The position numbers and the translations under genes were made by a program. A stretch of DNA of 32,923 nucleotides, taken from positions 1 through 32,923 of the forward strand of contig NIVC01004864.1 in NCBI GenBank assembly GCA_002269645.1. The letters run 5' to 3'. This stretch comes from Macrostomum lignano (Eukaryota). The notes under the pieces are model-generated. The model searched no databases and was not told the origin of the DNA. It saw nothing but the letters and a program-made list of their open reading frames with translations. Position 1 is the first letter of the stretch. Each line of letters begins with the position of its first letter. Positions 14,272 to 15,242 of the stretch are shown one piece after another.

Positions 14272-15242
14272 TTATACATTGGCAAATGCATTATGCAGAT
14301 AGCAATAGCGTCGCGATGCTACACCTCCGACGCCTCTCCACAGGCACACACACTCAAACGCCATCGAGGGCGGAGGTTCATCTCGCTCATCCTGCGTCTC
14401 AGCTGCGGTTGCGTCCTGGCGATCCTCACTTTCTGCAGTCTCAGCTGCGGTTGCGTCCTGGCGATCCTCACTTTCTGCAGTCTCAGCTGCGGTTGCGTCC
14501 TGGCGATCCTCACTTTCTGCAGTCTCAGCTGCGGTTGCGTCCTGGCGATCCTCACTTTCTGCAGTCTCAGCTGCGGTTGCGTCCTGGCGATCCTCACTTT
14601 CTGCAGTCTCAGCTGCGGTTGCGTCCTGGCGATCCTCACTTTCTGCAGTCTCGCAATCCAGTCGAGGCTGCTTAATTGCCAGGTAGCCGTAAAACTCGCT
14701 GCGCTCGCTGTCCTGTTCCTCGTGATCCACAACGACCTGTTTAACGGTATGGGAGCACTCTTGTCATACTAAATTGTACGAGCTAATGGATATATTGCAT
14801 GTAGAGTAAGTGGGCAGCTTACCCTGGGACGCGGATATACCCGGCGGATGCACTCCGCTCGCACGCTGAGCGCTAATTTTTTGCCATTGGCTGAAATGCT
14901 AGCGGAGGAGAGGGCACCGCCTCCCAAAATAAAAATTTTGGGAGACTCCAGCAACAGAGTTGCGCCGGGTAGGAGCTCGGGAAACAGTCTCGTCGCCCGG
15001 ACGTCAACGACTGCTTCAATATAAGTAAAGTCGTCACACAAAGTTGCGGTGAGGAAACTCTCAGGTTCCACGACTTCGAGTGCTCGGACAAACGCAAGTA
15101 CGACAGACTTGGTCTTTTCGACTGGTGCGTCGCATAAGGTTGCATGGCACTCCAGGTACGCCAGATCGTCTGGGCACAACGCGCGAGTATCCATTTGCGC
15201 CGCAACCCACGATGGGGATTCGTGAATGTTGAAATTCGACAT
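14272..15242 (-). CDS. Transposon gene 2: OB-fold-like domain plus acidic 14-aa repeats; exons 15242-14823 and 14736-14272
   Basis: ATG (MSNFNIH) at 15242. A phase-0 86-bp intron 14822-14737 (AGG|GTAAGC...TTAAACAG|GTC) joins the two ORFs in frame. The segment LCDDFTYIEAVV...ELLPGATLLLESPKIF...LSVRAECIRRVYP is OB-fold-like. The extent of exon 2 is uncertain. Confidence 0.6.
14396..14655. repeat. 42-bp tandem repeat, about 6 copies, coding (AAETAESEDRQDAT)n on the minus strand
   Basis: TCTCAGCTGCGG at 14439 and 14481. Confidence 0.92.

What the first reader, a model, noticed from the sequence alone, without database searches (positions are those of the whole stretch)
14823..15242. OB-fold cargo gene resembling HROB/MCM8IP (DUF4539) inside the transposon
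Seen: the segment VVLAFVRAL...LTATLCDDFTYIEAVV...ELLPGATLLLESPKIF...LALSVRAECIRRVYP, spliced to an acidic repeat tail. From memory, the HROB OB-fold has a close ELKPGSVLLLKQIGVF...YLNVTPNNLVHIYSP pattern; RMI1 and TPP1 folds are more distant alternatives. HROB binds ssDNA and activates MCM8-MCM9 in homologous recombination. Inference: the element may steer repair of its excision gap (restoring the donor copy) or protect ssDNA at its ends.
Basis: partly seen in the sequence, partly recalled or inferred. Interest (0 to 1): 0.75.

Follow-up and report, generated by a model that had tools for sequence, protein, structure and literature searches.

The report
Transposon gene with HROB-like OB domain
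An apparently intact 8-kb cut-and-paste transposon in what is most likely the flatworm Macrostomum lignano carries, beside its transposase, a real two-exon gene whose first exon weakly but consistently resembles the OB-fold of the DNA-repair factor HROB and ends in an acidic repeat tail; the resemblance stays below the accepted family threshold, so it is a good lead, not a proven case.

Summary
Bases 14823-15242 (minus strand) are a 140-codon first exon. An 86-nt GT-AG intron joins it in frame to an acidic 14-aa x6 repeat exon. The gene lies inside an 8,082-bp element with perfect 21-nt inverted ends, a 2-bp target duplication and a transposase with the CACTA/Mirage/Chapaev-type motif pattern.

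- Ordinary searches find nothing: Pfam gives no hit, phmmer against 1.84 billion proteins finds only a Macrostomum lignano fragment, and AlphaFold without an alignment fails (pLDDT 32-37).
- When HMMER's speed filters are bypassed, residues 51-104 align without gaps to positions 9-62 of Pfam HROB (PF15072) and add about 11 bits.
- Twenty non-OB controls add 0-0.7 bits, E. coli SSB adds about 2, and the rival TBP profile gains only 2.4.
- Trimming an 18-aa beta4-beta5 loop gives an unaided HROB hit covering positions 8-84 of 85 (24.4 bits, E 2.9e-5). This is still below the 30.8-bit cut-off.
- The Phe matching HROB F553, the MCM9 anchor, is kept. HROB's MCM8-binding motif and PRR18 region are absent.

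My reading: an HROB-like OB accessory protein that probably engages host recombination factors. No function was tested.

The parts
14823..15242 (-). Exon 1 of the cargo gene (140 codons). Residues 1-45 are an unassigned N-terminus. Residues about 46-138 are the putative OB fold: beta1 VVLAF, beta2 FLTATLC, beta3 YIEAVV, short helix, beta4 ATLLLESPKIF, an 18-aa loop ILGGGALSSASISANGKK, then beta5 LALSVRAECIRRVY.
   Evidence: ORF and splice donor. Codon usage. HROB profile alignment 51-104 to positions 9-62, and after loop trimming to positions 8-84. Strand order from a low-confidence AF2 model.
14737..14822 (-). 86-nt GT-AG intron (GTAAGC...ACAG), phase 0.
   Evidence: Sequence. The same junction peptide occurs in UniProt A0A1I8GUH7.
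14272..14736 (-). Exon 2. It has an acidic/aromatic linker (VVVDHEEQDSERSEFYGYLAIKQPRLDCE), six 14-aa acidic repeats (TAESEDRQDATAAE; DNA 14392-14652, 42 bp x6.2, 99% identical) and a short C-terminus. The stop is at 14272-14274, though a further downstream splice is not excluded.
11467..11487 (+). Left terminal inverted repeat CCCGCTGGGACCCAACTCCGA. The 2-bp target-site duplication AC lies at 11465-11466.
19528..19548 (-). Right terminal inverted repeat, 21/21 complementary to the left one. The 2-bp target-site duplication AC lies at 19549-19550.
11484..12223 (+). Left subterminal region with 15 exact copies of CCGATTTTCA, including a 71-bp x5.8 array at 11810-12223. This is a likely accessory-protein or transposase binding array.
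   Evidence: 23 matches in the window against 2.5 expected by chance.
19181..19503 (-). Right subterminal region with the same motif in inverted orientation (81-bp x2.5 array at 19181-19385).
15850..18622 (-). Transposase gene. My spliced model is 875 aa, with introns at 16832-16890 (59 nt) and 16586-16671 (86 nt). It has an in-frame N-terminal 27-aa x3.5 repeat. The motif order is D ... D(FDAPVRAD) ... C(2)C (GCDKC) ... H(4)H (HQLCAH) ... E (FEATH).
   Evidence: ORFs, splice model, CMCT signature as described in PMC12730594. No Pfam or database homologue was found.
12599..13870 (-). Third gene of the element. My spliced model is 378 aa with an intron at 13034-13168. It has an N-terminal domain, a coiled coil, an acidic stretch and a C-terminal helical domain. 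Function unknown.

Best explanation
Bases 14823-15242 are the first exon of a genuine accessory ('cargo') gene of an apparently intact, probably recently inserted 8.08-kb cut-and-paste transposon of CACTA/Mirage/Chapaev type. The host is most likely Macrostomum lignano.

The exon encodes a roughly 95-residue OB-fold domain that is a remote relative of the HROB/MCM8IP OB fold (DUF4539). It carries an extra 12-18 residues in the beta4-beta5 loop. Exon 2 adds an acidic, partly aromatic linker and a six-fold acidic repeat.

Inferred mechanism, not shown: the OB domain docks on a host replication or recombination partner, as HROB's OB fold docks on MCM9. The candidate keeps the Phe equivalent to HROB F553. 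The acidic tail may bind a basic cleft such as RPA70N, as HROB's own acidic motifs do. Together they would bias repair of the excision gap or of transposition intermediates in the element's favour.

The protein lacks HROB's MCM8-binding motif, so it is a stripped-down relative or mimic, not an HROB orthologue.
For: The gene is real. It has an ORF, phase-0 GT-AG splicing and a junction shared with UniProt A0A1I8GUH7. Its codon usage matches the element's other genes and differs from the host gene (GC3 0.58 against 0.92).

The element is real. It has 21/21 inverted ends, a 2-bp target duplication that restores the host repeat, subterminal motif arrays and three same-strand genes.

HROB similarity:
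- Candidate plus a short true-HROB helper scores 63.0 bits with 2 stretches. Nine shuffles and the reversed sequence score 52.0-52.1, and nine real 140-aa segments score 52.0-52.7.
- Residues 41-140 give +11.5 bits, more than the two halves added (+4 and +2), as expected for one collinear domain.
- The stretch is 51-104 against profile positions 9-62, equal in length and so apparently ungapped.
- With the loop trimmed and no helper, PF15072 scores 24.4 bits, E 2.9e-5, positions 8-84 of 85. The runner-up is the OB-fold family PF01336.
- With the helper attached, the true beta5 construct scores 25.8 bits against 17.1-17.4 for reversed or shuffled beta5. All four trimming variants score 19.5-25.8, against 14.4 untrimmed.

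Specificity: E. coli SSB OB adds about 2 bits and the TBP profile adds 2.4.

Pairwise against the human HROB OB sequence (PMC11055865 Table S1): Smith-Waterman z 3.3 intact and 5.7 trimmed.

Candidate F104 aligns with HROB F553. The F553E primer confirms that residue is the F of QIGVF.
Against: - The native sequence gives no Pfam hit at E<=10. Its own contribution of about 11-14 bits corresponds to a Pfam-wide E of roughly 0.03-0.3.
- Even the trimmed construct (24.4 bits) is below the 30.8-bit gathering score. Trimming was my own edit, and four variants were tried.
- phmmer against 1.84 billion representatives finds no HROB or any other relative.
- Identity to human HROB OB is only 13 of 84 residues. 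The intact pairwise p is about 0.01.
- The strongest segment (ELLPGATLLLESPKIF) is a common helix-end/strand pattern that also weakly hits TBP.
- AF2 models are unusable (pLDDT 32 and 37) and Foldseek gives nothing.
- No MCM8-binding motif or PRR18 region is present.
- A five-fold concatenation test did not bring up HROB. That is probably a filter effect, but it remains a negative result.
- No sister copies, expression data or biochemistry were available.
Confidence: 0.4

Rival explanations
1. It is a real transposon accessory protein whose fold is not an OB fold or is unrelated to HROB. The HROB signal would then be a sub-threshold coincidence built on a generic beta-strand / Pro-Gly / beta-strand pattern. 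Its function would be something else, for example a TnpA-like end-binding or regulatory protein.
For: No standard search reports any family. The best single segment also matches TBP in the PDB at E 0.18. The score stays below the Pfam cut-off even after trimming. AF2 and Foldseek are uninformative. The element has dense subterminal motif arrays that need a binding protein.
Against: 20 of 20 non-OB controls give no more than 0.7 bits, against 11 for the candidate. The signal is collinear over the full model, and both halves and beta5 contribute. The runner-up family is another OB fold. The TBP profile adds only 2.4 bits.
Confidence: 0.3
2. It is a generic single-strand-DNA-binding OB protein with an acidic C-terminal tail. 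That architecture is analogous to bacterial or phage SSB and to the RPA-like genes of Helitrons. It would coat ssDNA in transposition or gap-repair intermediates, with no link to MCM8-9.
For: The architecture is an OB-like domain followed by an acidic tail. [quoted passage not shown] There is precedent for OB-fold ssDNA binders carried by transposons: Helitron RPA-like genes (PMC4683698, listed).
Against: There is no hit to SSB, RPA or other ssDNA-binding OB families. HROB scores about 13 bits above PF01336 on the same construct. Cut-and-paste DDE transposition has no obligatory long ssDNA intermediate (general knowledge).
Confidence: 0.15
3. It is a decaying or non-functional ORF: an old transduplicated fragment of a host gene (possibly host HROB), or an exon kept open by chance, with no role in the element.
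For: CACTA-type and other DNA transposons often carry captured gene fragments (general knowledge). Both tandem repeats inside the element's ORFs are near-identical and so very young. The only database relative is a chimeric gene model that enters exon 1 at an internal acceptor. No conservation could be measured.
Against: The ORF is intact with in-phase splicing. Its codon usage matches the element's own genes, not the GC3-rich host gene. No similarity to any host-type HROB is detectable by phmmer, so any capture would be ancient and yet the ORF is still open. The element as a whole looks intact, with perfect inverted ends and target duplication.
Confidence: 0.1
4. The domain is a TBP-like (helix-grip) half-domain rather than an OB fold.
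For: The top four PDB sequence hits are archaeal TATA-binding proteins (E 0.18-1.1). Both TBP repeats align to candidate residues about 69-116.
Against: With the same filter-bypass test, the TBP Pfam profile gains only 2.3-2.5 bits from the candidate (63.7 against 61.2-61.5), compared with about 11 for HROB. The match covers only about 40 residues.
Confidence: 0.03

Closest known systems
HROB / MCM8IP / C17orf53 OB fold (Pfam PF15072, formerly DUF4539)
   Same: Collinear similarity runs over profile positions 8-84 of 85. It includes the ELxPGxxLLL-xxxxF beta4 segment, the Phe equivalent to F553 (the MCM9 anchor) and the L-x-V...[IV]-Y-x-P beta5 end. An acidic region is present in the same protein, and HROB uses acidic motifs to bind RPA1 (PMC7290032).
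   Different: The score is below the family cut-off, and identity to human HROB OB is about 15%. There is an extra 12-18 residues in the beta4-beta5 loop. The protein is about 294 aa rather than about 647 aa. It has no MCM8-binding motif (human 396-413, L405) and no PRR18-like region. Its acidic part is C-terminal and tandemly repeated. It is encoded by a transposon with the transposon's codon usage, not by a host gene.
RPA-like (RPA70-derived) genes carried by plant and some animal Helitrons
   Same: Both are mobile-element-borne accessory genes encoding an OB-fold protein taken from the host replication or recombination toolkit.
   Different: The element class differs (rolling-circle Helitron against a DDE cut-and-paste element), and so does the OB family (RPA70 DNA-binding domains against HROB-like). 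No RPA-family signal was found here.
CACTA/En-Spm two-component design (TnpD transposase plus TnpA accessory protein binding subterminal repeats); CMC/CMCT clade including Mirage and Chapaev
   Same: The transposase motif order is D, D, C(2)C, H(4)H, E. The target duplication (2 bp) lies within the clade's 2-5 bp range. There are dense subterminal direct and inverted motif arrays, and several genes on one strand.
   Different: The termini are CCC...GGG rather than the usual CA...TG. No detectable sequence similarity to described transposases was found with the tools available. The accessory genes are unrelated to TnpA.
Bacterial and phage SSBs (OB fold plus acidic C-terminal tail)
   Same: The domain logic matches: an OB fold followed by an acidic tail that in SSBs recruits partner proteins.
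   Different: There is no sequence relation. In the helper test the E. coli SSB OB added only about 2 bits to the HROB profile, and no hit to the Pfam SSB family was reported for the candidate in the Pfam scans. The tail here is a long tandem repeat.

Membership tests
HROB / DUF4539 (PF15072) | Scores at or above the Pfam gathering threshold (30.8 bits) against PF15072. | tested here: not met
   The native sequence gives no reported hit at E<=10. Its own contribution is about 11-14 bits. The loop-trimmed construct scores 24.4 bits, E 2.9e-5.
HROB / DUF4539 (PF15072) | Collinear alignment across the whole OB domain (beta1 to beta5) that exceeds controls. | tested here: met
   Residues 51-104 align to positions 9-62 with equal lengths. 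After trimming the loop, positions 8-84 of 85 are covered. The candidate adds +11 bits, against 0-0.7 for 20 non-OB controls and about 2 for SSB. With the helper attached, the true-beta5 construct scores 25.8 bits against 17.1-17.4 for scrambled beta5. Caveat: the trimming was chosen by me.
HROB / DUF4539 (PF15072) | Conserved apolar residue equivalent to human F553, which anchors the OB fold on MCM9. | tested here: met
   Candidate F104 (SPKIF) falls on profile position 62, which is human F553 (QIGVF). The numbering was checked with the F553E primer and the 492-575 domain limits. This is shown in an alignment only. The Phe could be conserved for fold reasons.
HROB / DUF4539 (PF15072) | MCM8-binding motif upstream of the OB fold (human 396-413, L405) and a PRR18-like region. 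| tested here: not met
   Only 45 residues precede the domain. BLASTP and phmmer of the full candidate against human HROB find nothing beyond the 16-aa OB core. The comparison used the human sequence only.
HROB / DUF4539 (PF15072) | Acidic RPA1-binding motifs. | tested here: inconclusive
   An acidic/aromatic linker (EEQDSERSEFYGYL) and a 6x acidic repeat are present. They are C-terminal, not N-terminal, and show no significant similarity to HROB's motifs.
HROB / DUF4539 (PF15072) | Three-dimensional OB fold (five-stranded barrel). | tested here: inconclusive
   AF2 without an alignment gave pLDDT 32.0 and 36.7. Strand order in the model is compatible with an OB fold but unreliable. Foldseek against the PDB gave no match at E<=0.001.
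HROB / DUF4539 (PF15072) | Binds and stimulates MCM8-9, and promotes homologous recombination. | not testable with these tools
   This needs biochemistry or genetics. Whether M. lignano has MCM8, MCM9 and HROB was not established.
CMC/CMCT DNA transposons (CACTA/EnSpm, Mirage, Chapaev, Transib and relatives) | [quoted passage not shown] | tested here: met
   By inspection of the spliced model: FDAPVRAD ... GCDKC ... HQLCAH ... FEATH. The signature is as stated in PMC12730594. This is motif reading only.
CMC/CMCT DNA transposons (CACTA/EnSpm, Mirage, Chapaev, Transib and relatives) | Target-site duplication of 2-5 bp. | tested here: met
   Removing 2 bp (AC) restores the 53-bp host repeat unit exactly. 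A duplication of 3-4 bp would require asymmetric termini.
CMC/CMCT DNA transposons (CACTA/EnSpm, Mirage, Chapaev, Transib and relatives) | Termini 5'-CA...TG-3' (in most families). | tested here: not met
   The termini are CCCGCTGGG...CCCAGCGGG.
CMC/CMCT DNA transposons (CACTA/EnSpm, Mirage, Chapaev, Transib and relatives) | Detectable sequence homology to described transposases of the clade. | tested here: inconclusive
   No Pfam hit. Two word-index searches returned nothing, probably because they were saturated at 8000 candidates. The metagenome scan was negative. No Repbase or HHpred was available.

The most novel reading that the evidence does not exclude
A cut-and-paste DNA transposon encodes a stripped-down HROB: an MCM9-docking OB fold plus an RPA-binding acidic tail. 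It would recruit, or compete for, the host MCM8-9 long-tract gene-conversion machinery at its own 8-kb excision gap. The donor copy would then be restored from the sister chromatid, and each excision would become a net copy gain. This would be the first transposon-encoded modulator of the MCM8-9/HROB pathway.
Probability: 0.12. Interest if true: 0.8.

Novelty: new variant of a known kind. Interest (0 to 1): 0.5.

Why it matters
How cut-and-paste transposons gain copies is usually put down to passive reliance on host gap repair. A transposon-encoded factor related to HROB would show an element actively steering repair-pathway choice. HROB's loss specifically impairs long-tract gene conversion (PMC7290032), and long-tract conversion is what an 8-kb excision gap needs.

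Macrostomum lignano is transgenesis-competent (general knowledge), so the idea could be tested directly there. Even without the HROB link, the locus is an apparently intact three-gene DNA transposon whose transposase and accessory proteins are invisible to Pfam. That is useful for flatworm genome annotation and possibly as a genetic tool.

Tried and rejected
1. Standard Pfam scans of the exon and of the full spliced protein, at E up to 10, found nothing.
2. The word-index homologue search and exhaustive phmmer against 1.84 billion representatives found only the M. lignano fragment A0A1I8GUH7.
3. That fragment is not on record in the contig collection. None of seven exact window ORF products is in the protein collection. 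Sister copies therefore could not be fetched.
4. Both metagenome scans, with the cargo protein and with the transposase core, were negative.
5. Two transposase homologue searches returned nothing, each saturated at 8000 word candidates.
6. AF2 without an alignment, on 169 aa and then on 100 aa, gave pLDDT 32 and 37. Foldseek on the second model was meaningless.
7. A five-fold concatenation of the candidate, meant to push weak hits past HMMER's filters, did not bring up HROB. Shuffled controls produced stronger spurious hits, so I judged the test uninformative, probably because of the ungapped first-pass filter.
8. The PDB holds no HROB OB chain to compare with.
9. The TBP-like reading suggested by PDB hits was tested and rejected: +2.4 bits only.
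10. Treating the 18-aa loop as a hidden intron was rejected. The only GT...AG pair spans 27 nt, and the UniProt model reads through ISANGKK.
11. Pfam found nothing for the spliced transposase or for gene 3. The C-terminus of gene 3 looks BEN-like by eye, but that is unsupported.
12. A literature search for MCM8/MCM9 in flatworms was unproductive.

Full report
**Context.** The window is eukaryotic. It holds a single-exon Slo/BK potassium-channel gene (5802-9299, +) and TFIIH p62 exons (22229-24228, -) with very GC-rich third codon positions. It also holds many tandem repeats. The only database relative of the feature is a Macrostomum lignano UniProt entry, 96-98% identical over the part it covers. 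The source is therefore almost certainly this flatworm or a very close relative.

**The observation.**
- The first ATG is at 15242. A GTAAGC donor begins at 14822 and an AG acceptor ends at 14737. Exon 1 is therefore exactly 14823-15242 (140 codons).
- It joins in phase 0 to VVVDHEEQDSERSEF..., followed by six near-identical 14-aa acidic repeats (42 bp x6.2, 99% identical).
- The junction peptide ...RRVYPRPRVVVDHEEQ... is present in UniProt A0A1I8GUH7. That model reaches exon 1 from an unrelated upstream exon through an internal acceptor, so it vouches for the junction only.
- Codon-position GC content (0.586/0.464/0.579) matches the transposase and the third gene of the element, not the host BK gene (GC3 0.915).
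- A codon-usage log-odds trained on the element's other genes is +26 in the proposed frame and between -19 and +5 in the other five frames.
- I conclude the exon is real coding sequence that has evolved with the element.

**The element.**
- Perfect 21-nt inverted repeats lie at 11467-11487 and 19528-19548.
- They interrupt a 53-bp host tandem repeat. Joining the flanks after removing 2 bp (AC) restores the unit exactly, which indicates a 2-bp target-site duplication.
- Inside both ends are arrays of CCGATTTTCA in inverted orientation: 23 matches in the window against 2.5 expected. They include 71-bp x5.8 and 81-bp x2.5 tandem arrays.
- All three genes are on the minus strand.
- My spliced transposase model is 875 aa (introns 16832-16890 and 16586-16671). 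It shows the motif order D, D(FDAPVRAD), C(2)C (GCDKC), H(4)H (HQLCAH), E (FEATH).
- PMC12730594 describes that order as the signature of EnSpm/CACTA, Mirage, Chapaev, Transib and relatives, which make 2-5 bp duplications.
- The termini are CCC...GGG, not the usual CA...TG.
- No Pfam family or database homologue was found for the transposase or for the third gene (378 aa after splicing).
- The superfamily call therefore rests on motif reading and the target duplication. I give it moderate confidence.

**Standard tests of the HROB idea were negative or failed.**
- Pfam gave no hit for the exon even at E<=10.
- The PDB sequence search gave only weak TBP matches at E 0.18-1.1.
- Exhaustive phmmer against 1.84 billion representatives found only the M. 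lignano fragment.
- AlphaFold without an alignment gave pLDDT 32.0 (169 aa) and 36.7 (residues 41-140). The second model's strand order is compatible with an OB fold but cannot be trusted. Foldseek found nothing.
- Sister copies could not be retrieved.

**A sub-threshold test of the HROB profile.**
- hmmscan drops weak matches at its speed filters. To get past them I appended a short genuine HROB segment to the test sequence.
On its own it hits PF15072 at 8.8e-15, positions 47-84. It is confirmed in the human HROB sequence in Table S1 of PMC11055865.
- With this helper attached, HMMER evaluates the whole sequence.
- The candidate raised the PF15072 score from 52.0 to 63.0 bits and added a second matched stretch.
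- Controls stayed flat:
  - nine shuffles scored 52.0-52.1;
  - the reversed sequence scored 52.0;
  - nine real 140-aa segments from other proteins of the window scored 52.0-52.7;
  - E. coli SSB, a genuine but unrelated OB fold, added about 2 bits.
- Residues 41-140 alone give +11.5 bits, more than 41-88 (+4) and 85-140 (+2) added together, as expected for one collinear domain.
- With a 10-residue helper the best stretch becomes the candidate's own: residues 51-104 against profile positions 9-62, equal lengths.

**The beta4-beta5 loop.**
- The profile's last third was not aligned. The candidate has 18 residues (ILGGGALSSASISANGKK) where HROB has about 6.
- I trimmed the loop to six residues. 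The construct then gave a direct hit with no helper: PF15072, 24.4 bits, E 2.9e-5, positions 8-84 of 85.
- The OB-fold family PF01336 was the only other hit (E 0.26).
- With the helper attached, the true-beta5 construct scored 25.8 bits against 17.1-17.4 when beta5 was reversed or shuffled.
- All four trimming variants scored 19.5-25.8, against 14.4 untrimmed.
- The rival TBP profile, tested the same way, gained only 2.3-2.5 bits.
- Against the human OB domain alone, Smith-Waterman z is 3.3 intact (p about 0.012) and 5.7 trimmed (p about 7e-4), with 13 of 84 residues identical.

**How much this proves.**
- The native contribution corresponds to a Pfam-wide E of roughly 0.03-0.3.
- The trimmed score involves an edit chosen by me and still falls short of the 30.8-bit cut-off.
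- The strongest segment is a common structural motif.
- A five-fold concatenation test did not bring up HROB. I attribute this to the ungapped first-pass filter, but it is a negative result.
- I put the chance of an OB fold at about 0.6, and of specific relatedness to the HROB family at about 0.4.

**Function.**
- PMC11055865 shows that HROB lacking its OB fold (492-575) binds ssDNA normally but cannot stimulate MCM8-9.
- In that paper the OB fold contacts the MCM9 hinge through F553, and a separate disordered region (L405) binds MCM8.
- The F553E primer places F553 at the F of QIGVF. That is profile position 62, which is candidate F104. The anchor residue is therefore conserved in the alignment.
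- The candidate has no counterpart of the MCM8-binding motif or the PRR18 region.
- HROB binds RPA1 through acidic motifs (PMC7290032). The candidate's acidic/aromatic linker and repeat tail could do the same, but this is inference.
- HROB loss impairs long-tract gene conversion (PMC7290032). It is the most novel reading, and I give it about 0.12.

**Comparison and novelty.**
- Transposon-borne OB-fold genes are known from Helitrons, which carry RPA-like genes (PMC4683698).
- Multi-gene CACTA-type elements with subterminal binding arrays are also classical.
- An HROB-like OB gene in a cut-and-paste element did not turn up in my one literature search on transposon-borne OB-fold genes, and I know of none.
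- I rate it a new variant of a known kind and give it moderate interest, because the central assignment remains sub-threshold.

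Noticed in passing
window 11038-11466 and 19551-19640: The transposon sits inside a 53-bp tandem-repeat array (about 8 units to the left, about 1.7 to the right). The clean 2-bp duplication and the perfect inverted ends suggest a recent insertion.
   Followed up: yes
window 18245-18524 (transposase N-terminus) and 14392-14652 (cargo exon 2): Both element genes contain very young in-frame tandem repeats: 81 bp x3.5 at 98% identity and 42 bp x6.2 at 99% identity. Their unit lengths are multiples of three, giving Ser/Gly/Pro-rich and acidic low-complexity arms.
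   Followed up: partly
window 12599-13870 (-): The third gene of the element is 378 aa after removing a 135-nt intron. It has an N-terminal domain, a coiled coil, an acidic patch and a C-terminal helical domain that looks BEN-like by eye. Pfam finds nothing. It is a candidate binder of the CCGATTTTCA subterminal arrays.
   Followed up: partly
window 15850-18622 (-): The transposase is invisible to Pfam and to the homologue searches, although it shows the D-D-C(2)C-H(4)H-E order of CACTA/Mirage/Chapaev-type enzymes. The read-through stretch AIMSKKYIYIHSCFSTHFMQVK may hide another small intron.
   Followed up: partly
UniProt A0A1I8GUH7 (P0001) compared with window 14880-14900: The only database relative is a chimeric-looking gene model. 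An unrelated upstream exon is apparently spliced to an AG inside cargo exon 1 (…tccgctag|C ATT TCA…). It carries the odd name 'AP2/ERF domain-containing protein'. This suggests a second, differently embedded copy of the element in the genome.
   Followed up: partly
window 5802-9299 (+): An intronless 1165-aa Slo/BK-type calcium-activated potassium-channel ORF (Pfam Slo-like_RCK at 1.6e-72) with GC3 of 0.92. This contrasts sharply with the transposon genes (GC3 about 0.55-0.60).
   Followed up: partly
window 22229-24228 (-): TFIIH p62 (TFB1) exons, with a PH_TFIIH domain and BSD domains. They are flanked by long 19-bp tandem arrays (20313-22211) and (TAGA)n.
   Followed up: no
window 30234-31451 (-): A 405-aa ORF made largely of a 12/24-bp coding repeat (TMSN/TMSD units), followed by a non-repetitive C-terminal region (…HILSNDTYRDHSYLAW…). 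It was not searched.
   Followed up: no
window 4-573, 31761-32259, 32675-32841: Arrays of 29-32-bp tandem repeats lie near both ends of the window. (TCTG)n and (ACAG)n microsatellites at 2279-2816 and 3792-3966 generate long spurious ORFs.
   Followed up: no
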